From assembly GCA_950097015.1 (NCBI GenBank), contig CATNEN010000029.1:682001-746000 (forward strand): DNA of 64,000 nucleotides, in the 5' to 3' direction. The position numbers and the translations under genes were made by a program. Under the pieces are notes generated by a model. That model was given only the letters and a program-made list of their open reading frames with translations, was not told the DNA's origin and searched no databases. Positions 4,533 through 32,867 of the stretch are shown here, piece after piece (positions within the stretch are counted from its first letter, which is position 1; every line of letters begins with the position of its first letter). The stretch is from Macrostomum hystrix. Taxonomy: Eukaryota; Animalia; Platyhelminthes.

Positions 4533-4773
4533 CTTATAACTAGTGCATATGTACACCTCTGTGTGGGTGTGTACCCAAGTACAACATGTAACTATTCTTG
4601 TGCGCTGTACTTAGAATTACGAGTATTAATGATCGGTTTAATAAAATTTCAGCGTTTAACTAAGAGAACGCCCGGCCCTGACTGTGGCCTCACTAACCAG
4701 CAGTAAGCCCATTTTGGCAGGTTATTAATTGCGCAAACTGTTACCTGCGCTATTGCTATTCCACAGCGTCATC

Positions 4774-10532
<5,759 letters not shown>

Positions 10533-15177: not shown

Positions 15178-17292
15178 AAAATCCCCTCCTAACTGAAAAT
15201 CAATCCCCAGACAATCCCCTTCTAACTGAAAATCAATCCCCAGATAATCCCCCTCCTAACTGAAAATCGATCCCCAGATAATCCCCTCCTAACTGAGAGT
15301 CGATCCCCAGACAATCCCCTTCTAACTGAAAATCAATCCCCAGATAATCCCCTCCTAACTGAGAATCAATCCCCAGACAATCCCCTTCTAACTGAAAATC
15401 AATCCCCAGATAATCCCCTCCTAACTGAAAATCAATCCCCAGATAATCCCCTCCTAACTGAGAATCAATCCCCAGATAATTCCCTCCTAACTGAAAATCA
15501 ATCCCCAGATAATCGCCCTCCTAACTGAAAATCAAGCCCCAGATAATCCCCTCCTAACTGAAAATCAATCCCCAGATAATCCCCTCCTAACTGAGAGTCA
15601 AGCCCCAGATAATCCCCTTCTAACTGAAAATCAATCCCCAGATAATCCCCTCCTAACTGAGAGTCAAGCCCCAGACAATCCCCTTCTAACTGAAAATCAA
15701 TCCCCAGATAATCCCCTCCTGCCTGAGAATCAATCCCCAGATAATCCCCTCCTAACTGAAAATCAATCCCCAGAAAATCCCCTCCTAACTGAGAGTCAAG
15801 CCCCAGATAATCCCCTCCTAACTGAGAGTCAAGCCCCAGACAATCCCCTTCTAACTGAAAATTAATCCCCAGACAATCCCCTCCTAACTGAGAATCAATC
15901 CCCAGACAATCCCCTTCTAACTGAAAATCAATCCCCAGACAATCCCCTTCTAACTGAAAATCAATCCCCAGACAATCCCCTTCTAACTGAAAATCAATCC
16001 ACAGATAATCCCCTCCTAACTGAAAATCAATCCCCAGATAATCGCCCTCCTAACTGAGAGTCAATCCCCAGATAATCCCCTCCTAACTGAAAATCAATCC
16101 CCAGATAATCCCCTCCTAACTGAGAGTCAATCCCCAGATAATCCCCTTCTAACTGAAAATCAAACCCCAGATAATCCCCTCCTAACTGAGAGTCAAGCCC
16201 TAGACAATCCCCTTCTTACTGAAAATCAATCCCCAGATAATCCCCTCCTGCCTGAGAATCAATCCCCAGATAATCCCCTTCTAACTGAGAGTCAAGCCCG
16301 AGATAATCCCCTCCTAACTGAGAGTCAATCCCCAGATAATCCCCTTCTAACTGAGAGTCAAGCCCCAGATAATCCCCTTCTAACTGAAAATCAATCCCCA
16401 GATAATCCCCTCCTAACTGAGAGTCAAGCCCCAGAAAATCCCCTTCTAACTGAAAATCAATCCCCAGATAATCCCCTCCTAACTGAAAATCAATCCCCAG
16501 ATAATCCCCTTCTAACTGAGAGTCAATCCCCAGATAATCCCCTTCTAACTGAGAGTCAAGCCCCAGACAATCCCCTTCTAACTGAAAATCAATCCCCAGA
16601 TAATCCCCTCCTAACTGAGAGTCAATCCCCAGATAATCCCTCCTAACTGAGAGTCAATCCCCAGATAATCCCCTTCTAACTGAGAGTCAAGCCCCAGACA
16701 ATCCCCTTCTAACTGAAAATCAATCCCCAGATAATCCCCTCCTAACTGAGAGTCAATCCCCAGATAATCCCCTTCTAATTGAGAGTCAAGCCCCATACAA
16801 TCCCCTTCTAACTGAAAATCAATCCCCAGAAAATCCCCTCCTAACTGAGAGTCAAGCCCCAGATAATCCCCTCCTAACTGAGAGTCAAGCCCCAGACAAT
16901 CCCCTTCTAACTGAAAATTAATCCCCAGACAATCCCCTCCTAACTGAGAATCAATCCCCAGACAATCCCCTTCTAACTGAAAATCAATCCCCAGACAATC
17001 CCCTTCTAACTGAAAATCAATCCCCAGACAATCCCCTTCTAACTGAAAATCAATCCACAGATAATCCCCTCCTAACTGAAAATCAATCCCCAGATAATCG
17101 CCCTCCTAACTGAGAGTCAATCCCCAGATAATCCCCTCCTAACTGAAAATCAATCCCCAGATAATCCCCTCCTAACTGAGAATCAATCCCCAGATAATCC
17201 CCTCCTAACTGAGAATCAATCCCCAGATAATCCCCTCCTAACTGAGAATCAATCCCCAGATAATCCCCTCCTAACTGAGAATCAATCCCCAG
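15178..17292 (+). repeat. 33 bp minisatellite (ccccagataatcccctcctaactgaaaatcaat), left flank of the Cys-protein gene pair
   Basis: About 64 copies; a distinctive block recurs at an offset of 1056 bp (15771 and 16827). Confidence 0.95.
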
Positions 17293-17524
17293 ACTCACTC
17301 TGATTGAATGATCTAACGGATCATTCTGAAGTGACAGCACATGCTAGTTCTGAAATCACATGCTAGTTATAGACATGCAGCAAAGCATTATGCCAAAAAT
17401 TAAAAGTTTTTGCGATAGGTTTCCACCGTTTATTGAAGCAGCAAGGAAGAGGACTAAAACACAAGGCAGAATATTCAGACCGATAAGCAAATCCCAGAGT
17501 CAAATGACGGTAGCTCAGCAGCTC

Positions 17525-19963
17525 TCACACAACAGTATTGTTCCTGCACTGCATGTGGTACAGGGTGAACGAGTCCATCAGGGTGGGGTCGCTGCCCTCC
17601 ACGCACTTGCAGCTGAGGCTGTCATCGATCACGAAGTCGCCGGGCTCGAAGAACTCTCCATCACGCTCGCAGCCGTTCAGACGGCAGACCCACTCCAGGT
17701 CTTTGCCCCTTCTGCCAAGAAAGTAGTTGTAGCCGCACCTGCACAGATTGTTGCCAACGGTTTTCTCTTCGCCAATCTTGCTGCAGCTATCTGAGCTGTT
17801 GGCAGCGGCGGAGAGGCTGCAATCAAAGGGGAAGCGGTGTCAGGGCTTGGCGGATGTTGCAGAGGCTGCAGTGAGAGGGGAAGCGGGGTCTGGGGTTTTA
17901 TGGATGTTGAGGAAGCTGCAGTGCGAGGGGAAGCGGTGTCTGGGGCTAGGCGGATGTTGCAGAGGCTGCAATCAAAGGGGAAGCGGTGTCAGGGCTTGGC
18001 GGATGTTGCAGAGGCTGCAGTGAGAGGGGAAGCGGGGTCTGGGGTTTTATGGATGTTGAGGAAGCTGCAGTGCGAGGGGAAGCGGTGTCTGGGGCTAGGC
18101 GGATGTTGCAGAGGCTGCAGTGAGAGGGGAAGCGGTGTCTGGGACTTGGCGGATGTTGCAGAGGCTGCAGTGAGAGGGGAAGCGGTGTCTGGGGCTTGGC
18201 GGATGTTGCAGAGGCTGCAATGAAAGGGGAAGCGGTGTCTGTGGCTTGATGGATGTTGCAGAGGCTGCAGTGAGAGGGGAAGCGGTGTCTGTGGCTTGAT
18301 GGATGTTGCAGAGGCTGCAGTGAGAGGGGAAGCGGTGTCTGGGGCTAGGCGGATGTTGCAGAGGCTGCAGTGAGAGGGGAAGCGGTGTCTGGGGCTAGGC
18401 GGATGTTGCAGAGGCTGCAGTGAGAGGGGAAGCGGTGTCTGGGACTTGGCGGATGTTGCAGAGGCTGCAGTGAGAGGGGAAGCGGTGTCTGGGGCTTGGC
18501 GGATGTTGCAGAGGCTGCAATGAAATTGGAAGCGGTGTCTGTGGCTTGATGGATGTTGCAGAGGCTGCAGTGAGAGGGGAAGCGGTGTCTGTGGCTTGAT
18601 GGATGTTGCAGAGGCTGCAGTGAGAGGGGAAGCGGTGTCTGGGGCTAGGCGGATGTTGCAGAGGCTGCAGTGAGAGGGGAAGCGGTGTCTGGGGCTAGGC
18701 GGATGTTGCAGAGGCTGCAGTGAGAGGGGAAGCGGTGTCTGGGACTTGGCGGATGTTGCAGAGGCTGCAGTGAGAGGGGAAGCGGAGTCAGGGGCTTGGC
18801 GGATGTTGCAGAGGCTGCAGTGAGAGGGGAAGCGGTGTCTGTGGCTTGATGGATGTTGCAGAGGCTGCAGTGAGAGGGGAAGCGGTGTCTGTGGCTTGAT
18901 GGATGTTGCAGAGGCTGCAGTGAGAGGGGAAGCGGTGTCTGGGGCTAGGCGGATGTTGCAGAGGCTGCAGTGAGAGGGGAAGCGGTGTCAGGGCTTGGCG
19001 GATGTTGCAGAGGCTGCAGTGAGAGGGGAAGCGGTGTCTGTGGCTTGATGGATGTTGCAGAGGCTGCAGTGAGAGGGGAAGCGGTGTCTGTGGCTTGATG
19101 GATGTTGCAGAGGCTGCAGTGAGAGGGGAAGCGGTGTCTGGGGCTAGGCGGATGTTGCAGAGGCTGCAGTGAGAGGGGAAGCGGTGTCTGGGGCTAGGCG
19201 GATGTTGCAGAGGCTGCAGTGAGAGGGGAAGCGGTGTCTGGGACTTGGCGGATGTTGCAGAGGCTGCAGTGAGAGGGGAAGCGGTGTCTGGGGCTTGGCG
19301 GATGTTGCAGAGGCTGCAATGAAAGGGGAAGCGGTGTCTGTGGCTTGATGGATGTTGCAGAGGCTGCAGTGAGAGGGGAAGCGGTGTCTGGGGCTAGTCG
19401 AATGTTGCAGTGGCTGCAATGAAAGGGGAAGCGGTGTCTGTGGCTTGATGGATGTTGCAGAGGCTGCAGTGAGAGGGGAAGCGGTGTCTGGGACTTGGCG
19501 GATGTTGCAGAGGCTGCAGTGAGAGGGGAAGCGGTGTCTGGGACTTGGCGGATGTTGCAGAGGCTGCAGTGAGAGGGGAAGCGGAGTCAGGGGCTTGGCG
19601 GATGTTGCAGAGGCTGCAGTGAGAGGGGAAGCGGTGTCTGTGGCTTGATGGATGTTGCAGAGGCTGCAGTGAGAGGGGAAGCGGTGTCTGGGGCTAGGCG
19701 GATGTTGCAGAGGCTGCAGTGAGAGGGGAAGCGGTGTCTGGGGCTTTTGCATTTTGCGAGGCCTTCTAAACATGGATATGATAATAGAGATTGCGGCAAA
19801 CCGAATCATCTGTTCTACATACTTAACGCACCTACCCTGGAATCTGAGTCCCCGGCGCTAAACAATGTCTAGAATCGCCAGTGTCCGAGGGCAAGCTACA
19901 GCAGAGCTGACGGACTTACCAAGCAGCCAGGATGGCGGCAGTCAGGAGCGCAGTCGAGTTCAT
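17525..19963 (-). CDS. Orphan secreted cysteine-rich protein A (111 aa; signal peptide plus 8-Cys FnI/VWC-like double module)
   Basis: Exon 1 19963-19920 (MNSTALLTAAILAAC; donor gtaagt) and exon 2 17816-17525 (acceptor ttgattgcag; TGA). Mature part SSDSCSKIGEEKTVGNNLCRCGYNYFLGRRGKDLEWVCRLNGCERDGEFFEPGDFVIDDSLSCKCVEGSDPTLMDSFTLYHMQCRNNTVV. Cys spacing, phase-2 junction and upstream TATA are conserved with the paralog at 21065. Confidence 0.85.
17811..19745 (-). repeat. 50 bp minisatellite whose unit is the 3' splice site (cttcccctctcactgcag|cctct); intron of gene A
   Basis: About 39 copies; same unit as the 5 copies in the intron of gene B. Confidence 0.95.
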
Positions 19964-21290
19964 CCTGCAGTCGCTGTGGAAAGTGTCGGATGTCGATCAA
20001 AGCCTGTGAGAGATGTGCTGCGAATATCGGAAGACTTTGTGAATGTGTTCAGTCTCTTCAGTGAGGCCTCTATATACTGGTTAGGGCACGTTGCTGTGAT
20101 TCTTCCGTCTGTCTGCACGTTACCTCGTAATTAGTTTTCTGTTTTCCTAAAATAATTGCGTCTTTTGGGCTGAGTTGCGCAATCGCTCACAGTTTAGACA
20201 CAGAATAATTTCTCAGCAGTATCGTCTAAGCTGGAACTGTCAGTAGCGGTCCCACGTAATTGGGAAATACGAGTAATTGGGAACTGATCAGTGATCAACT
20301 GCAGTGTGAAAGTGGAGCTTGTACCGATCCCGCTGTACCGAGCCTCGCTGGATGCTGGGGTTGGATGTGCAAGTTTCAGTTGCTATGCAAATTTATGGGC
20401 AGGTCCCGTATATTTTTCTCACCTCACTTTAGTTCATAGCATTTACTTCCCCCATGACTCACAAGTTTTCATCCTGCAGACACATCTCACTGATAATAGA
20501 CAATTCTGAGGCATCGGTGAGCAAACTGCTCAGCAAATCACGCGACTCTATTCTCCAGGTTTGAGAAGGCACTAAAATTTCAGCATTACCCCACACCCCA
20601 CAACTAAGCACCTCACACTATACATGTTAAGACCTGGGAAGCAGGAGACAGGAACAACTTTAACTTTCCTACTGCAGTTGAGCACTGATCCTAATTATTT
20701 TGTGAAAGACAAGATTCAGTGACTTTCAAAAAAGCTTCAGACCATGCTTTAAAATGCTCTGAAAAAAGGTTGTTGGTTACGTGGGACCGCTACTGACAGT
20801 TCCAGCTTAGACGATATACTGAGAAATTATTCTGTGTCTAAACTGTGAGCGATTGCGCAACTCAGCGCAACTGACCAATTAATCTCACGAAAACAGGAAA
20901 ATAATTAACGTGCAGACAGACGGAAGTATCACAGCAACGTGCCCTAACCAGTATATAGAGGCCTCACTGAAGAGACTGAACACATTCACAAAGTCTTCCG
21001 ACATTCGCAGCACATCTCTCACAGGCTTTGATCGACATCAGATACTTTCCACAGCGACTGCAGAATGAACTCGACTGCGCACCTGACTGCCGCCATCCTG
21101 GCTGCTTGGTGAGTCCGTCAGCTCTGCTGTAGCTTGCCCTCGGACACTGGCGATTCTAGACATTGTTTAGCGCCGGGGACTCAGATTCCAGGGTAGGTGC
21201 GCTAAGTATGTAGATCAGATGATTCGGTTTGCCGCAATCTCTATTACCATATCCATGTTTAGAAGGCCTCGCAAAATGCAAAAGCCCCAG
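19740..21290. repeat. Inverted duplication: arms of about 19740-20259 and 20777-21290 around a 517 bp unique spacer (shared divergent promoter region)
   Basis: Direct reverse-complement reading shows near identity except one ~45 bp patch; homology continues through the intron arrays into exon 2. Confidence 0.93.
20850..20960 (+). promoter_or_regulatory. Promoter of gene B: TATA-like tatatag (about 20952) and C/EBP-type ATTGCGCAA (about 20852); mirrored at about 20070-20185 for gene A
   Basis: Motifs read directly; TATA lies about 110 bp upstream of the ATG in both copies. Confidence 0.55.
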
Positions 21291-21818
21291 ACACCGCTTC
21301 CCCTTTCATTGCAGCTTCCTCAACATCCGCCTAGCCCCAGACACCGCTTCCCCTCTCACTGCAGCCTCTGCAACATCCATCAAGCCACAGACACCGCTTC
21401 CCCTCTCACTGCAGCCTCTGCAACATCCATCAAGCCACAGACACCGCTTCCCCTCTCACTGCAGCCTCTGCAACATCCGCCTAGCCCCTGACTCCGCTTC
21501 CCCTCTCACTGCAGCCTCTTCGCCGCTGCCAACTGCTCAGAGAGCTGCAGCACGTTTGGCGAAGAGAAAATTGCGGGCAACAAGCTGTGCAGGTGCAGCT
21601 ACAACTACATTCGCGGCCGCAGGAGCAAAGACCTGCAGTGGGTCTGCCGTCTGTACGGCTGCGAGCGCTACAGCAAAACCGAGGGTCGGAATGTGTTCTA
21701 CCAACCTGGCGACTTCGTGATCGAGGACGGTCTCAGATGCGACTGCGTGGAGGGCACGGACCGCAGGCTGATGGACGGGTACACTTTCTACCACATGCGG
21801 TGCATTAAAACTGAGTGA
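21065..21818 (+). CDS. Orphan secreted cysteine-rich protein B (115 aa), paralog of A
   Basis: Exon 1 21065-21108 (MNSTAHLTAAILAAC; donor gtgagt) and exon 2 21515-21818. LFAAANC then SESCSTFGEEKIAGNKLCRCSYNYIRGRRSKDLQWVCRLYGCERYSKTEGRNVFYQPGDFVIEDGLRCDCVEGTDRRLMDGYTFYHMRCIKTE*. Confidence 0.87.
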
Positions 21819-21977
21819 ACTGGCTCATGTCACGTGACCTGTGCTGACTGACTGCCCTCTTGGTGTCTGGGCTATGAAATGCTGTCTTTTTTATGTTGCC
21901 ACATCCTCGACTTTGGCAAATATACTTTGCTGTTTCAATACTTGGTGCGGTGCAGGGTAGAGTACAATTTGACTTTT

Positions 21978-23075
21978 TGAAGAATCAATCCCCTGATAAT
22001 CAATTTCTAACTAAGAATCAATGCCTAGATAATCCACCCCTAAAAGAGAATCAATCCCCTGATAATCCACCCCTAAAAGAGAATCAATCCCTAGATAATC
22101 CCATCCTAAAAGAGAATCAATCCCCAGATAATCCCATCCTAAAAGAGAATCAATCCCTAGATAATCCCATCCTAAAAGAGAATCAATCCCTAGATAATCC
22201 CATCCTAAAAGAGAATCAATCCCCAGATAATCGCATCCTAAAAGAGAATCAATCCCCAGATAATCCACCCCTAAAAGAGAATCAGTCCCCAGATAATCGC
22301 ATCCTAAAAAAGAATCAATCCCCAGATAATCCCATCCTAAAAGAGAATCAATCCCCAGATAATCCCATCCTAAAAGAGAATCAATCCCCAGATAATCGCA
22401 TCCTAACAGAGAATCAATCCCTAGATAATCCACCCCTAAAAGAGAATCAATCCGCAGATAATCCCATCCTAAAAGAGAATCAATCCCTAGATAATCCACC
22501 CCTAAAAGAGAATCAATCCCCAGATTATCCCATCCTAAAAGAGAATCAATCCCCTGATAATCCACCCCTAGAAAAGAATCAATCCCTAGATAATCCACCC
22601 CTAAAAGAGAATCAATCCCCAGATAATCCCATCCTAAAAGAGAATCAATCCCCAGATAATCCACCCCTAGAAAAGAATCAATCCCCAGATAATCCACCCC
22701 TAAAAGAGAATCAATCCCCAGATAATCCCATCCTAAAAGAGAATCAATCCCCAGATAATCCACCCCTAGAGAAGAATCAATCCCCAGATAATCCTATCCT
22801 AAAAGAGAATCAATCCCCAGATAATCCACCCCTAAAAGAGAATCAATCCCCAGATAATCCCATCCTAAAAGAGAATCAATCCCCAGATAATCCACCCCTA
22901 GAGAAGAATCAATCCCCAGATAATCCACCCCTAAAAGAGAATCAATCCCCAGATAATCCCATCCTAAAAGAGAATCAATCCCCAGATAATCCACCCCTAA
23001 AAGAGAATCAATCCCCAGATAATCCACCCCTAAAAGAGAATCAATCCCCAGATAATCCACCCCTAAAAGAGATCA
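21978..23075 (+). repeat. 33 bp minisatellite (ccccagataatccacccctaaaagagaatcaat), right flank of the gene pair; same family and orientation as 15178-17292
   Basis: About 33 copies with no visible indels. Confidence 0.95.
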
Positions 23076-23659
23076 ATCTTGCTCGAGATAATCCTATTGG
23101 AGAATTAACTCCGACAAAGAATGTATAATCCTGAAATCAATAATCAGTTCATCCATAAAATCCTTAAGTCTAGAGCAAATTTAACCTGAAAATAATTAAA
23201 TCAATCAATCTTTTAGAAGCTATACTAAAAGACTGTCTATTGGCCAGCTAGCACAGTTAGTTACAGCGATTCCAATTGAGACAGACACGCATGCTGTGGG
23301 CCAATGATAGTTAGTTTCCCACTGTCGCGATCCCCCAGCCAACTTAATGGCATTGTAAGACAGGATTCGTTTTTTGATTCCTTAATTTGCAAGTTTCTCA
23401 GCCGTACCGTACTGTAGCTGAGCATAGTCGGGCGTTTAAATTATTGAATTAATCTAAATGTGTATGCGCCCATGCATATATTAGTTTTTACTGACACTAA
23501 GAGGGCCTTGTTAGTACATTTGATTGTATTCCACTGCTCACAAGCTTGAAATATTGCAGCTGAAAGTACATCAAAGTGCGATTAAGGTGAGCATGCAAAG
23601 AAAATTTAATACTCCTTATCAGAAGCTGATAACAACTGTTAAACTATCATGCGATTATT

Positions 23660-24860
23660 TTCCATGATTACCCACCTGTTATTCAGTACCTTCCATGATT
23701 ACCCACCTGTTATTCAGTACCTTCCATGATTACCCACCTGTTATTCAGTACCTTCCATGATTACCCACCTGTTATTCAGTACCTTCCATGATTACCCACA
23801 TGTTATTCAGTACCTTCCATGATTACCCACCTGTTATTCAGTACCGTCCATGATTACCCACCTGTTATTCAGTACCTGTTATTCAGTACCTTCCATGATT
23901 ACCCACCTGTTATTCAGTACCTTCCATGATTACCCACCTGTTATTCAGTACCGTCCATGATTACTCACCTGTTATTCAGTACACCTTCCATGATTACCCA
24001 CCTGTTATTCAGTACCTTCCATGATTACCCACCTGTTATTCAGTACCGTCCATGATTACTCACCTGTTATTCAGTACACCTTCCATGATTACCCACCTGT
24101 TATTCAGTACCTTCCATGATTACCCACCTGTTATTCAGTACCTTCCATGATTACCCACCTGTTATTCAGTACCGTCCATGATTACTCACCTGTTATTCAG
24201 TACACCTTCCATGATTACCCACCTGTTATTCAGTACCTTCCATGATTACCCACCTGTTATTCAGTACCTTCCATGATTACCCACCTGTTATTCATTACCT
24301 TCCATGATTACCCACCTGTTATTCAGTACCTTCCATGATTACCCACCTGTTATTCAGTACCTTCCATGATTACTCACCTGTTATTCAGTACCTTCCATGA
24401 TTACCCACCTGTTATTCAGAACCTTCCATGATTGCCCACCTGTTATTCAGTATCTTCCATGATTGCCCACCTGTTATTCAGTATCTTCCATGATTACCCA
24501 CCTGTTATTCAGTACCTTCCATGATTACTCACCTGTTATTCAGTATCTTCCATGATTACCCACCTGTTATTCAGTACCTTCCATGATTACTCACCTGTTA
24601 TTCAGTATCTTCCATGATTACCCACCTGTTATTCAGTACCTTCCATGATTACTAACCTGTTATTCAGTACCTTCCATGATTACTCACCTGTTATTCAGTA
24701 TCTTCCATGATTACTCACCTGTTATTCAGTACCTTCCATGATTACTCACCTGTTATTCAGTACCTTCCATGATTACTCACCTGTTATTCAGTACCTTCCA
24801 TGATTACTCACCTGTTATTCAGTATCTTCCATGATTACTCACCTGTTATTCAGTACCTTC
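23660..24860 (+). repeat. 31 bp minisatellite (ttccatgattacccacctgttattcagtacc)
   Basis: About 38 copies. Confidence 0.95.
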
Positions 24861-30548: not shown

Positions 30549-30974
30549 AGTTCACGATCTTAAAGGAATGTATTATCTACCTTAAGGTACAAGCGTACAT
30601 TTCTACAGATTGCTGTTTAATGAATTATTTAAGGCTTGTTGTCAAAGCCATTTTCTTTAACTTTATCTGCAGCTTAGCTCAATCTCTTGCACAGTTCATT
30701 GCACGCAACCTACAGACTATTCTGGCCACGTAATTTCATGGTATGATTTATTGAACACCGTTTCTGCAACATCGGAATCGGAAATCCTAGGCCCAACAAT
30801 AGCAACTCAGAGCGGCTCCAATCGATTCGGTGTCACGAAATACAGCAGTGGGCGGATGAGAATAAAGATAAATAATTTATATCCTTCCGGTTTTCTGTTG
30901 ACCATTGGCAGTTCTTGTACTTTTTTACATATGTGGTGGTTAATACAACCAATAGTTTATACTTACTCTCTCCA

Positions 30975-32287
30975 GAAGGACTGGAAGATGGGTAGGGACT
31001 GTCTCCTGAAGGATTGGATGATGGGTAGGGACTGTGTCCTGAAGGATTGGATGATGGGTAGGGACTGTGTCCTGAAGGATTGGATGATGGGTAGGGACTG
31101 TGTCCTGAAGGATTGGATGATGGGTAGGGACTGTCTCCTGAAGGATTGGATGATGGGTAGGGACTGTGTCCTGAAGGATTGGATGATGGGTAGGGACTGT
31201 GTCCTGAAGGATTGGATGATGGGTAGGGACTGTGTCCTGAAGGATTGGATGATGGGTAGGGACTGTCTCCTGAAGGATTGGATGATGGGTAGGGACTGTG
31301 TCCTGAAGGATTGGATGATGGATAGGGACTGTCTCCTAAAGGATTGGATGATGGGTAGGGACTGTGTCCTGAAGGATTGGATGATGGGTAGGGACTGTGT
31401 CCTGAAGGATTGGATGATGGGTAGGGACTGTGTCCTGAAGGATTGGATGATGGGTAGGGACTGTGTCCTGAAGGATTGGATGATGGGTAGGGACTGTGTC
31501 CTGAAGGATTGGATGATGGGTAGGGACTGTGTCCTGAAGGATTGGATGATGGATAGGGACTGTCTCCTAAAGGATTGGATGATGGGTAGGGACTGTGTCC
31601 TGAAGGATTGGATGATGGATAGGGACTGTGTCCTGAAGGATTGGATGATGGGTAGGGACTGTGTCCTGAAGGATTGGATGATGGATAGGGACTGTCTCCT
31701 AAAGGATTGGATGATGGGTAGGGACTGTGTCCTGAAGGATTGGATGATGGGTAGGGACTGTGTCCTGAAGGATTGGATGATGGGTAGGGACTGTGTCCTG
31801 AAGGATTGGATGATGGGTAGGGACTGTGTCCTGAAGGATTGGATGATGGGTAGGGACTGTGTCCTGAAGGATTGGATGATGGGTAGGGACTGTGTCCTGA
31901 AGGATTGGATGATGGGTAGGGACTGTGTCCTGAAGGATTGGATGATGGGTAGGGACTGTGTCCTGAAGGATTGGATGATGGGTAGGGACTGTGTCCTGAA
32001 GGATTGGATGATGGGTAGGGACTGTGTCCTGAAGGATTGGATGATGGGTAGGGACTGTCTCCTAAAGGATTGGATGATGGGTAGGGACTGTGTCCTGAAG
32101 GATTGGATGATGGGTAGGGACTGTCTCCTGAAGGATTGGATGATGGGTAGGGACTGTCTCCTGAAGGATTGGATGATGGGTAGGGACTGTGTCCTGAAGG
32201 ATTGGATGATGGGTAGGGACTGTGTCCTGAAGGATTGGATGATGGGTAGGGACTGTGTCCTGAAGGATTGGATGATGGATAGGGATG
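30975..32287 (+). repeat. 33 bp minisatellite (gaaggattggatgatgggtagggactgtgtcct)
   Basis: About 40 copies; source of the spurious 513-aa and 487-aa ORFs. Confidence 0.95.
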
Positions 32288-32867
32288 GGTAGTCATAAAA
32301 TCTCGATAAGCACTTTACATTTTTCTTTATCTCTTGGAAAGCTTTTCTGATTTTTGGATTTGTTTATACTTGTCGTGGAAAAGTTGCACACAGAACATTC
32401 TTAAATCCAAAGCAATCACAGACTATTTGAGTCTAGCTGGGTCCACAGGGTTCTTATTTGCTCAAGGTGTTCCCTCGGCGGAGCCAGGATGAGTTGGCCT
32501 GTCAGTTTGATTGACAGGCCACAGTGGCACTGGCAGTTCTGCGGCTGTGCCTGTAGTTACGCAGGTTGGATTAACTAAGAAATTGTGAGAGCGAGTTTGA
32601 GTCATTCCTTTTGGCACACATACTATAGCTGCTTTTGAGACGGCCTCATTCCGCTCACTCTAGACTGAGTTTTTGTAGACTCCACTTTAAAGTGCTGAGG
32701 AAGTTCATTATTACACAATGTCTACTTGCTTAACTTTGAACAATCCGAATATTGTCTATTGTTCTCATAGATTTTATACGAAAATATTGTATTTACTTCT
32801 CTCTCAACAAAGATTGAAAAATCAGCAAATTTCATTAAAATTGCTACTACGCCGTATAGACCCAGAT

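What the first reader, a model, noticed from the sequence alone, without database searches (positions are those of the whole stretch)
17525..21818. Head-to-head pair of orphan secreted 8-Cys proteins: nearly identical promoters and signal exons, strongly diverged and charge-shifted mature domains
Seen: two divergently transcribed 2-exon genes, both missed by the ORF track, share the spacing C-x13-C-x-C-x16-C-x4-C-x19/25-C-x-C-x18-C. Promoter, 5'UTR, signal-peptide exon and intron start are almost base-identical (one ~45 bp patch differs). The mature proteins are only about 65% identical by hand alignment, with a 6-aa indel and net charge of about -5 (A) versus +2 (B). Knowledge: the second half (CERDGEFFEPGD...CxC...C) resembles an FnI/VWC-type finger; non-coding DNA normally diverges faster than coding DNA. 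Inference: either gene conversion homogenises the inner arms of the palindrome to keep the genes co-regulated while the payload diversifies, or exon 2 is under positive selection. That fits a co-secreted effector pair (defence, toxin, adhesive or seminal-fluid protein), possibly a heterodimer. I recognise no family for these proteins.
Basis: partly seen in the sequence, partly recalled or inferred. Interest (0 to 1): 0.8.

Follow-up and report, generated by a model that had tools for sequence, protein, structure and literature searches.

The report
Palindromic pair of FnI-like secreted genes
Two back-to-back flatworm genes for small secreted cysteine-rich proteins keep almost identical promoters and signal exons, most likely by copying sequence between the two arms of a palindrome, while their protein-coding ends have drifted apart; it is a tidy example of known processes, and the proteins are not orphans.

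Summary
Two divergent two-exon genes (A, minus strand, 19963-17525; B, plus strand, 21065-21818) have canonical GT/AG introns. Their exon-2 proteins are 63% identical with a 6-aa indel and net charges of -5 and +2.

The inner arms (promoter, 5'UTR, 44-nt signal exon, proximal intron) are about 97% identical. Exon 2 is 82% identical and the 3' flanks barely align.

Synonymous divergence in exon 2 (dS 0.30) is about 11 times the non-coding inner-arm divergence (0.027; Fisher p = 1.6e-7). Divergence rises outward: 0.17 in the N-module, then 0.44 in the C-module. Positive selection alone cannot explain this. Arm-to-arm gene conversion fading across the intron minisatellite can. dN/dS is 0.70, not distinguishable from 1, although all eight core cysteines are kept.

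"Orphan" is wrong. The genome, very probably Macrostomum hystrix, holds eight loci. M. lignano has an orthologue of one paralogue and its own palindromic pair with identical exon 2. Weaker relatives occur in an annelid and a nemertean.

No Pfam family matches. The predicted fold is FnI-like.

No RNA runs were listed, so expression and splicing are untested. The complex prediction gave no answer on a heterodimer.

The scan noted this same stretch separately (s1-363653) for its intron minisatellite.

The parts
17429..17434 (-). AATAAA polyadenylation-like signal of gene A, about 95 nt after its stop codon
   Evidence: Read; inferred, no transcript data.
17525..17816 (-). Gene A exon 2: the last base of the junction Cys codon plus 96 codons and a TGA stop (17527-17525). 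Mature domain has 8 Cys, the short loop and net charge -5.
17817..19919 (-). Gene A intron (GT at 19919-19918, AG at 17818-17817). It contains a 50-bp minisatellite, 38.8 copies, at 17812-19746; each unit carries a pyrimidine tract plus CAG.
19920..19963 (-). Gene A exon 1 coding part, 44 nt, MNSTALLTAAILAA plus TG: the signal-peptide exon.
   Evidence: 43/44 identical to B.
19964..20122 (-). Gene A 5'UTR and core promoter, with TATATA at 20076-20071, 113 nt upstream of the ATG.
   Evidence: 154/159 identical to B.
20123..20168 (-). Divergent patch on the A side (46 nt), not homogenised.
   Evidence: B's patch resembles the outgroup copy C; A's is derived.
20169..20259 (-). Distal inner arm on the A side; high identity to B 20777-20866 resumes here.
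20260..20776 (.). Unique spacer of the palindrome. Its core (20378-20580) is homologous, in inverted orientation, to the spacer of the second pair at C29:5.998 Mb.
20777..20866 (+). Distal inner arm on the B side.
20867..20905 (+). Divergent patch on the B side (39 nt).
20906..21064 (+). Gene B core promoter (TATATA at 20952-20957) and 5'UTR.
21065..21108 (+). Gene B exon 1 coding part, 44 nt, MNSTAHLTAAILAA plus TG.
21109..21514 (+). Gene B intron, with 4.8 copies of the same 50-bp unit at 21282-21519.
21515..21818 (+). Gene B exon 2: 100 codons plus a TGA stop. Mature domain has 9 Cys, the long (ancestral) loop and net charge +2.
21919..21924 (+). AATATA variant polyadenylation-like signal of gene B, about 100 nt after its stop codon.
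   Evidence: Read; inferred.
15180..17293 (.). 33-bp satellite flanking the pair on the A side (64 copies).
   Evidence: Same family and same orientation as the array at 21981-23078.
21981..23078 (.). 33-bp satellite flanking the pair on the B side (33 copies). It is in direct, not inverted, orientation relative to the left array, so it lies outside the palindrome.

Best explanation
The locus is an old palindromic (head-to-head) pair of two-exon genes. The genes belong to a small family of secreted proteins of about 95 aa, found in Macrostomum and more widely in spiralians. Each protein is built of two four-cysteine beta modules with an FnI-like fold.

Non-reciprocal sequence transfer between the arms (arm-to-arm gene conversion, with occasional crossover) keeps the spacer-proximal parts nearly identical: promoter, 5'UTR, signal exon and proximal intron. 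The two genes therefore share regulation and a secretion signal.

Conversion becomes rarer outward, across the length-variable 50-bp intron minisatellite. Exon 2 has therefore escaped homogenisation, partly in its 5' half and fully in its 3' half and 3'UTR. It has diverged under weak constraint that still preserves the disulfide scaffold.

Shown: the anatomy, the divergence gradient, the existence of the family, and scaffold conservation.

Inferred: conversion as the process, the minisatellite as the barrier, secretion, expression, and ligand binding by the FnI-like modules.
For: 1. Divergence contrast. Non-coding inner arms differ at 9/328 sites (0.027). Exon-2 synonymous sites differ at 14/57 (dS 0.30), Fisher p = 1.6e-7.

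2. Outward gradient.
- Exon-2 nucleotide identity per 45 nt falls 0.89, 0.87, 0.84, 0.73, 0.82, 0.78, 0.42.
- dS is 0.165 in the N-module and 0.44 in the C-module.
- The 3' flank does not align.

3. Outgroup control. The promoter, exon 1 and intron of copy C (C29:5.998 Mb) are about 20% diverged from both A and B. A-B is 2.7% there, so those sites are not frozen by selection. Relative to C, the A/B inner arms are about 4 times younger than exon 2.

4. Old split of the two gene types.
- A, C29b and C12b share the same 18-nt loop deletion, while B keeps the ancestral long loop.
- N-module sites group A+B (35 against 9 and 3), whereas the C-module is unresolved (13, 11, 8).

5. A 39-46-nt unconverted patch sits inside the identical region, giving a mosaic pattern.

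6. The same architecture occurs in M. lignano: a head-to-head pair, a 44-nt exon 1, an intron minisatellite, and exon 2 identical over all 309 nt.

7. These are real genes of a real family.
- Eight loci lie in this genome.
- The C5 paralogue against its M. lignano orthologue gives dN/dS 0.09.
- Exon 1 length and intron phase are conserved across four paralogues.
- All 8 core Cys are retained in A and B (P = 0.017 under random placement).

8. Fold. The AF2 model has pLDDT 81.9.
- Residues 46-100 superpose on FnI modules at rmsd 1.3-1.6 A over 37-40 residues, Z 3.7-4.5.
- The whole chain against the 8-9FnI pair gives Z 4.7.
- The Atlas hit to MIG-18-like Fn1_2 has TM 0.50.
Against: - No transcript evidence. 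No sequencing run was listed, so expression, splice junctions and co-regulation are untested.
- With one genome, repeated gene conversion cannot be told apart from a single recent re-copying of the inner arm.
- dN/dS of 0.70 is not distinguishable from neutrality (Fisher p = 0.35). Both copies have changed residues that are invariant in their relatives, so one or both may be decaying.
- The FnI assignment rests on modest Z scores (below 5) and non-significant Foldseek E-values. No Pfam model matches.
- Orthology of the M. lignano pair is unresolved.
- The role of the minisatellite as a conversion barrier is inferred from position alone.
Confidence: 0.7

Rival explanations
1. There was one recent event rather than ongoing conversion. 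The inner part of one arm (promoter to proximal intron) was copied once over the other, for example by repair of a break in the palindrome or in the minisatellite. The 3% divergence simply dates that event.
For: The sharp contrast between inner arms and exon 2 fits a single tract ending in the minisatellite. Only one genome is available.
Against: - The graded decline through exon 2 suggests several tracts of different length.
- So does the unconverted patch flanked by identical sequence on both sides.
- M. lignano shows a fully homogenised pair, so homogenisation recurs in this gene family.
Confidence: 0.15
2. Selection alone explains the pattern. Strong purifying selection freezes the promoter, signal exon and intron start, while positive selection drives exon 2 apart. 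No sequence is exchanged between the arms.
For: - dN/dS of 0.70 is far above the 0.09 of the single-copy paralogue.
- There is a charge shift from -5 to +2.
Against: - Synonymous sites are 11 times more diverged than the non-coding arms.
- 169 nt of intron are 97.6% identical.
- The same positions differ by about 20% in copy C.
- dN/dS is not above 1.
Confidence: 0.04
3. One or both genes are unexpressed or decaying duplicates evolving almost neutrally. The pattern is then a by-product of palindrome dynamics with no functional payload diversification.
For: - dN/dS of 0.70 does not differ from 1.
- A and B differ at 9 of 35 columns that are invariant in four relatives.
- Sister copies C29b, D, C12b and C39b are visibly broken.
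- No RNA evidence exists.
Against: - Both reading frames are intact.
- Splice sites, TATA boxes and poly(A)-like signals are present.
- All eight scaffold cysteines are kept (P = 0.017).
Confidence: 0.15
4. The palindrome is an assembly artefact, such as a fold-back chimera of long reads.
For: Long-read assemblies can create false inverted duplications. No reads could be laid on the locus.
Against: - The arms differ in exon 2, in 3' flank and in array length (38.8 against 4.8 copies), and are separated by a unique 517-nt spacer.
- The locus lies 700 kb inside an 8.7-Mb contig.
- A second pair in this genome and a pair in M. lignano show the same layout. The M. lignano pair is also visible in an independent UniRef gene model.
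Confidence: 0.03

Closest known systems
Fibronectin type I (FnI) modules, including tandem FnI pairs and nematode MIG-18-like Fn1_2 (PF23003)
   Same: - Small disulfide-rich all-beta modules with four cysteines in a C...CxC...C pattern; there are two in tandem here.
- The C-module has the C-x-[DE]-x-G-x-[FY]-x-x-G-[DE] start typical of FnI.
- It superposes on FnI modules at 1.3-1.6 A.
- FnI pairs are the top Foldseek rows.
- Fn1_2 is the best Atlas hit by features (0.75) and by shape (TM 0.50).
   Different: - No Pfam fn1 or Fn1_2 hit even at E <= 10.
- The last loop is twice as long (16-18 against about 9 residues).
- It carries a family-specific motif, G-x-D-P-x-L-x-D-x-x-T-L-Y-H-x-x-C.
- Scores are modest (Z < 5, Foldseek E about 0.1).
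- Disulfide connectivity is untested.
VWC and single-VWC (SVWC, Vago-type) domains
   Same: Secreted proteins with 8-10 Cys. The VWC N-terminal subdomain is FnI-like, and VWF C4/C6, collagen IIA and CCN3 VWC domains appear among the structural matches (Z 3.1-4.9).
   Different: The C-x-x-C-x-C and C-C-x-x-C motifs of VWC are absent from the sequences. There is no PF00093 or PF15430 hit.
Beta-microseminoprotein (MSMB/PSP94)
   Same: A secreted, cysteine-rich, two-domain beta protein of about 90 aa. The N-terminal domain of chicken MSMB3 superposes on residues 46-100 (Z 4.5, rmsd 1.3 A over 37 residues).
   Different: Only one domain aligns, the cysteine number and spacing differ, and there is no sequence or Pfam match.
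DUF4789 (PF16033)
   Same: UniRef names a 68-aa M. lignano fragment of this family (P0013) 'DUF4789 domain-containing protein'.
   Different: PF16033 gives no hit at E <= 10 to A, B, the paralogues, P0001 or P0013. It also finds nothing in a six-frame scan of the genome.
Arm-to-arm gene conversion in palindromes, such as the human Y-chromosome ampliconic palindromes (from my own knowledge)
   Same: Inverted gene copies around a short unique spacer are kept near-identical by intrachromosomal conversion. Spacer inversion by inter-arm crossover is a known by-product, and here the spacer core is inverted between the two loci on contig C29.
   Different: This locus is tiny (about 4.7 kb). Homogenisation covers only the inner part in this species, so the coding ends diverge.
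Secreted peptide families with conserved signal or 5' regions and fast-evolving mature regions, such as conotoxins and snake-venom PLA2 (from my own knowledge)
   Same: A nearly invariant signal exon and flanking non-coding DNA go with a rapidly diverging mature domain on a fixed cysteine scaffold.
   Different: Here synonymous sites diverged as well and dN/dS is below 1. The contrast is therefore explained by homogenisation of the 5' part, not by accelerated protein evolution.

Membership tests
Fibronectin type I domain (PF00039) / Fn1_2 (PF23003) | Match to the family profile HMM | tested here: not met
   hmmscan against Pfam-A at E <= 10 returned no family for A, B, paralogue C12a or the foreign homologues P0001, P0004, P0006, P0009, P0010, P0012 and P0013, and no fn1, Fn1_2, VWC, SVWC, MSMB or DUF4789 hit for any query. 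The only rows were sub-threshold hits to unrelated families: Sha_B_N for the C5 paralogue (E 0.38) and DUF6011 for P0008 and P0018 (E 0.002).
Fibronectin type I domain (PF00039) / Fn1_2 (PF23003) | FnI fold: a small two-sheet beta module of about 40-45 residues | tested here: inconclusive
   The AF2 model has pLDDT 81.9. Residues 46-100 superpose on many FnI modules (rmsd 1.3-1.6 A, 37-40 residues, Z 3.7-4.5, 20-29% identity), and the 8-9FnI pair gives Z 4.7 over 74 residues. Foldseek E is about 0.08-0.3 and Atlas Fn1_2 TM is 0.50. The direction is consistent but the scores are middling. The N-module was not tested alone.
Fibronectin type I domain (PF00039) / Fn1_2 (PF23003) | Four cysteines per module, paired 1-3 and 2-4 | not testable with these tools
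   The spacing C...CxC...C occurs twice.
VWC (PF00093) / SVWC (PF15430) | C-x-x-C-x-C and C-C-x-x-C motifs, and a profile match | tested here: not met
   The motifs are absent from both translations and there is no Pfam hit.
DUF4789 (PF16033) | Match to the PF16033 profile | tested here: not met
   There is no hit for any family member, including the UniRef-labelled P0013, and no six-frame hit in the genome.
Macrostomum/spiralian family defined here (alignment A2) | N-terminal signal-like segment, two 4-Cys modules, and the C-terminal motif C-x-C-[VI]-x-G-x-D-P-x-L-x-D-x-x-T-L-Y-H-x-x-C | tested here: met
   A keeps the full motif. B keeps it with P>R and L>F. Nine columns are invariant across the 12 sequences, including six Cys. 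The profile of the six copies from this genome (alignment A1) retrieved P0001 at E = 8.5e-39, P0002 at 6.9e-32 and P0004, P0006, P0008, P0009 and P0010 at 7e-11 to 7e-5.
Palindrome under arm-to-arm gene conversion | Inverted arms far more similar than expected from the age of the duplication | tested here: met
   Inner arms diverge by 0.027, against exon-2 dS of 0.30 and an unalignable 3'UTR. The outgroup copy is about 20% diverged at the same positions. The A-type deletion shared with two dispersed copies shows the A/B split is older than those copies.
Palindrome under arm-to-arm gene conversion | Direct observation of conversion tracts (shared derived variants moving between arms in populations or sister species) | not testable with these tools
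   There is only one genome of this species, and no reads were obtainable.

The most novel reading that the evidence does not exclude
The palindrome together with a length-unstable intron minisatellite may act as a built-in 'conversion insulator'. Arm-to-arm exchange would keep the two promoters and signal exons locked together, giving strict co-expression and co-secretion. The array would stop tracts from reaching exon 2, letting a pair of FnI-like secreted proteins diversify in charge, loop length and a free cysteine. The proteins might be reproduction- or defence-related in a hypodermically inseminating flatworm. The extent of insulation would differ between species: complete homogenisation in M. 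lignano, partial in M. hystrix.
Probability: 0.15. Interest if true: 0.6.

Novelty: new member of a known kind. Interest (0 to 1): 0.42.

Why it matters
The locus is a compact, fully readable case of partial concerted evolution, with regulatory and signal parts homogenised and the payload free to diverge. Natural comparators are already in hand:
- a fully homogenised pair in M. lignano
- a decayed, non-homogenised second pair on the same chromosome
- a strongly constrained single-copy paralogue

It also defines a small, unnamed, FnI-like secreted protein family in flatworms, with relatives in an annelid and a nemertean, that no Pfam model captures. Macrostomum has positional RNA-seq, in situ hybridisation, about 100 transcriptomes and (in M. 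lignano) transgenesis. Both the conversion model and the function of the proteins are therefore directly testable. None of this overturns current understanding.

Tried and rejected
- Pfam scans at E <= 10 gave no family for A, B or paralogue C12a, and only sub-threshold hits to unrelated families for C5, P0008 and P0018.
- A PF16033 six-frame scan of the genome found nothing.
- The word-index protein search found nothing with B alone and only P0006 with the 12-sequence profile.
- PDB sequence searches with both profiles gave nothing meaningful.
- The first AF2 model from 6 sequences was poor (pLDDT 60) and was replaced by the 12-sequence model.
- The look-up of sequencing runs listed no run. 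Read laying could therefore not be used, and splicing and expression remain untested.
- Complex prediction on mature A with mature B gave no answer (score 0.11, mark 0.34). This is evidence neither for nor against a heterodimer.
- A protein tree with the distant homologues, and nucleotide trees of the Macrostomum copies, left A, B and C29b unresolved. They did not settle orthology with the M. lignano pair.
- Synteny with the M. lignano pair was not found: its PH-domain neighbour has no match in the window.
- Searches for Mlig010735 and Mlig033688 in the papers and in the supplements of PMC10468722 found nothing. Only one unrelated paper mentions DUF4789.
- Positive selection as the sole explanation was rejected on the dS evidence.
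- VWC, SVWC, MSMB and DUF4789 membership were rejected on motif and profile tests.
- Signal-peptide cleavage is therefore judged by eye only.

Full report
**What is there**

The window is G000:C29:682001-746000 of a 220,453,370-base, 42-contig assembly. These figures match the published Macrostomum hystrix assembly, described as about 220 Mb in 42 contigs (PMC10468722 abstract). One paralogue is 79% identical to a Macrostomum lignano protein. I therefore take the genome to be M. hystrix; this is an inference.

Direct reading and exon-wise translation confirm two divergent two-exon genes.
- A (minus strand): exon 1 at 19963-19920, intron 19919-17817, exon 2 at 17816-17525.
- B (plus strand): exon 1 at 21065-21108, intron 21109-21514, exon 2 at 21515-21818.

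Both have GT..AG introns and a 44-nt coding exon 1 that ends in phase 2. Each has a TATATA box 113 nt upstream of the ATG and an AATAAA or AATATA signal about 95-100 nt after the stop.

Exon 1 plus the first residues of exon 2 form an uncharged hydrophobic stretch followed by AAA. This looks like a signal peptide; I judged it by eye and ran no predictor.

The exon-2 proteins are 63% identical with one 6-aa gap. Their net charges are -5 and +2, and they carry 8 (A) and 9 (B) cysteines.

**The palindrome**

The repeat finder reports arms 19509-20122 and 20906-21519, 614 nt long and 96% complementary. Identity by segment:
- promoter plus 5'UTR: 154/159
- exon 1: 43/44
- unique intron part: 165/169
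- exon 2: 81.8%
- 3' flank: about 45%, not really alignable

A divergent patch (A 20123-20168, B 20867-20905) interrupts the identity. Identity then resumes out to A 20259 and B 20777, leaving a 517-nt unique spacer.

Each intron holds the same 50-bp minisatellite, with 38.8 copies in A and 4.8 in B. Each unit carries a pyrimidine tract plus CAG. That feature is the subject of a separate note on this same stretch (s1-363653).

The whole 4.7-kb unit sits between two arrays of one 33-bp satellite. These arrays lie in direct orientation, so they are outside the palindrome.

**Gene conversion or positive selection**

Nei-Gojobori estimates for A against B give dS 0.30 (14.0 of 57.0 sites), dN 0.21 and dN/dS 0.70. 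The non-coding inner arm differs at 9 of 328 sites. The contrast with synonymous sites is significant (Fisher p = 1.6e-7).

Selection on the protein therefore cannot be the cause of the contrast. The inner arms are simply much younger than exon 2.

Divergence rises with distance from the centre.
- Exon-2 identity per 45 nt runs 0.89, 0.87, 0.84, 0.73, 0.82, 0.78, 0.42.
- dS is 0.165 in the N-terminal module and 0.44 in the C-terminal module.

A third copy, C, at C29:5.998 Mb serves as a control for constraint. Its promoter, exon 1 and proximal intron align to both A and B at about 78-80% identity. Those positions are therefore free to change.

Three copies (A, C29b and the fragment C12b) share an 18-nt deletion at the same place. 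B keeps the long loop found in all other Macrostomum members. The split between the A type and the B type is thus older than the dispersal of those copies.

Site patterns agree. In the N-module, sites group A+B 35 times against 9 and 3. In the C-module the counts are 13, 11 and 8.

The simplest account is arm-to-arm conversion whose tracts usually end in or near the minisatellite and only sometimes reach into exon 2. The unconverted patch, in which B resembles C and A is derived, points to a mosaic of tracts rather than one block. A single recent event cannot be excluded with only one genome.

dN/dS of 0.70 is not different from 1 (p = 0.35), so positive selection is not shown. It is still far above the 0.09 measured for the single-copy C5 paralogue against its M. 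lignano orthologue.

All eight scaffold cysteines survive 41 non-synonymous differences (P = 0.017 under random placement). Yet A and B differ at 9 of 35 columns that are invariant in four relatives. This is a conserved scaffold with a fast-changing surface. It is compatible with either diversification or relaxation.

**Not orphans**

Six-frame searches of the genome find eight loci.
- A and B.
- Intact genes on C5 and C12. Each has its own 44-nt, phase-2 signal exon, and the C12 intron is only about 65 nt.
- C29b, which is frameshifted relative to its exon 1.
- A half-copy on C39.
- Two pseudogenes, C12b and C39b.

C29b belongs to a second head-to-head pair. Its partner D keeps exon 1 and an 18-copy 50-bp array but loses homology about 30 nt into exon 2. 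C12b begins inside the array and has no exon 1. The arrays therefore look like rearrangement breakpoints.

The word-index search found nothing. The exhaustive profile search found relatives:
- M. lignano PAA68186.1 (P0001, E = 8.5e-39)
- a chimeric M. lignano UniRef model (P0002)
- proteins from Owenia fusiformis (P0008) and Tubulanus polymorphus (P0010)
- unnamed metagenome and Logan proteins (P0004, P0006, P0009)

All of these share the C-terminal motif C-x-C-x-x-G-x-D-P-x-L-x-D-x-x-T-L-Y-H-x-x-C. The full-length homologues start with signal-like hydrophobic segments.

At the M. lignano locus L033 there is again a head-to-head pair. It has a 44-nt exon 1, a 41-bp intron minisatellite in both arms, arms 98-99% identical, and exon 2 identical at all 309 nt. 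The UniRef model P0002, a separately predicted gene model, translates one copy antisense and the other sense. This supports the layout independently.

Trees place C5 with P0001 (support 100/99). A, B and C29b group together, nested with C12a and the M. lignano pair. The trees do not resolve orthology, as expected under concerted evolution.

**What the protein is**

No Pfam family matches A or B, and no relative gives more than a sub-threshold hit to an unrelated family, at E <= 10. UniRef labels one fragment DUF4789, but PF16033 does not match it here.

With the 12-sequence alignment, AlphaFold2 gives an all-beta model with pLDDT 81.9. The structural matches point one way:
- The exhaustive structural search is dominated by FnI modules, VWC N-terminal subdomains and the N-domain of MSMB3, all on residues 46-100 (Z 3.7-4.9, rmsd 1.3-2.4 A).
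- The 8-9FnI pair matches the whole chain (Z 4.7, 74 residues).
- Foldseek's top rows are FnI pairs at non-significant E-values.
- The ESM Atlas returns MIG-18-like Fn1_2 both by features (0.75, below the reliable range) and by shape (TM 0.50).

Both halves show the C...CxC...C pattern. I therefore read the protein as two FnI-like four-cysteine modules.

By analogy with FnI modules, a role in binding an extracellular protein is plausible. That is pure inference. The tissue and the binding partner are unknown.

**Limits**

- The A:B complex prediction gave no answer.
- All searches used exon references.

**Verdict**

'Orphan', positive selection and heterodimer are not supported.

This is a neat but not surprising example: a palindromic gene pair under partial concerted evolution, in an unnamed FnI-like secreted family.

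Noticed in passing
window 15180-17293 and 21981-23078: The gene pair is embedded between two arrays of the same 33-bp satellite (64 and 33 copies). The arrays lie in direct orientation, so the palindrome ends between the 3'UTRs and the satellite. The 4.7-kb unit looks as if it was inserted into, or was flanked by expansion of, one array.
   Followed up: partly
L018 (G000:C29:5994000-6003900) 4550-7230: A second head-to-head pair lies on the same contig. Gene C (minus strand) has a 12-nt deletion in exon 1 and a 1-nt shift, so exon 2 is out of frame. Gene D (plus strand) keeps exon 1 (6154-6197) and an 18-copy 50-bp array, but homology ends about 30 nt into exon 2. Its arms are not homogenised: no inverted repeat of 40 nt or more was found.
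   Followed up: partly
window 20378-20580 vs L018 5458-5659: The spacer core is 78% identical between the two pairs but inverted relative to the flanking genes. C's patch also resembles B's, although C shares A's loop deletion. One inter-arm crossover that flipped the centre of one palindrome would explain all three observations. An inverted duplication of the whole locus plus a parallel deletion is the alternative.
   Followed up: partly
L019 (G000:C12:1865000-1874900) 5635-6990: Pseudogene fragment C12b starts abruptly inside a 21.6-copy array of the same 50-bp unit, with no exon 1 or promoter upstream. It carries an in-frame TGA. Together with D, this suggests the minisatellite is a breakpoint hotspot.
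   Followed up: partly
L033 (M. lignano NIVC01001271.1) 4787-8222: The M. lignano palindromic pair has a 41-bp intron minisatellite (18 and 22 copies). That unit shares only an 8-nt core (CAGACACC) with the 50-bp unit here. Exon 2 of the two copies is identical at all 309 nt. The M. lignano protein records recovered here include no separate model for either copy.
   Followed up: partly
P0002 / P0017 (UniRef A0A1I8H5Q8, A0A1I8ITQ0): These M. lignano gene models are chimeras. They read through the antisense strand of one family copy, the sense strand of the other, and a neighbouring PH-domain gene.
   Followed up: partly
window 21534-21536 (Cys 7 of B exon 2) vs 17797-17795 in A: B, the C5 and C12 paralogues and the M. 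lignano proteins have a ninth cysteine (C-x3-C at the mature N-terminus), which A has replaced by Ser. An odd cysteine count could mean an intermolecular disulfide in all members except A.
   Followed up: no
window 17812-19746 and 21282-21519: Each 50-bp intron unit carries a strong acceptor-like motif (pyrimidine tract plus CAG). Variant units with TTTCATTGCAG or TTTGATTGCAG are interspersed, and the unit next to exon 2 of A is such a variant. The scan noted this separately as s1-363653.
   Followed up: no
window 8628-9293 (+) and 30751-32292 (+): Neighbouring coding pieces include an AMPK alpha autoinhibitory-domain exon (PF21147, E = 2e-17). There is also a repeat-rich ORF with weak teneurin-EGF-like hits. 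Several further minisatellites lie nearby, for example 31/93-bp units at 23660-24860.
   Followed up: no
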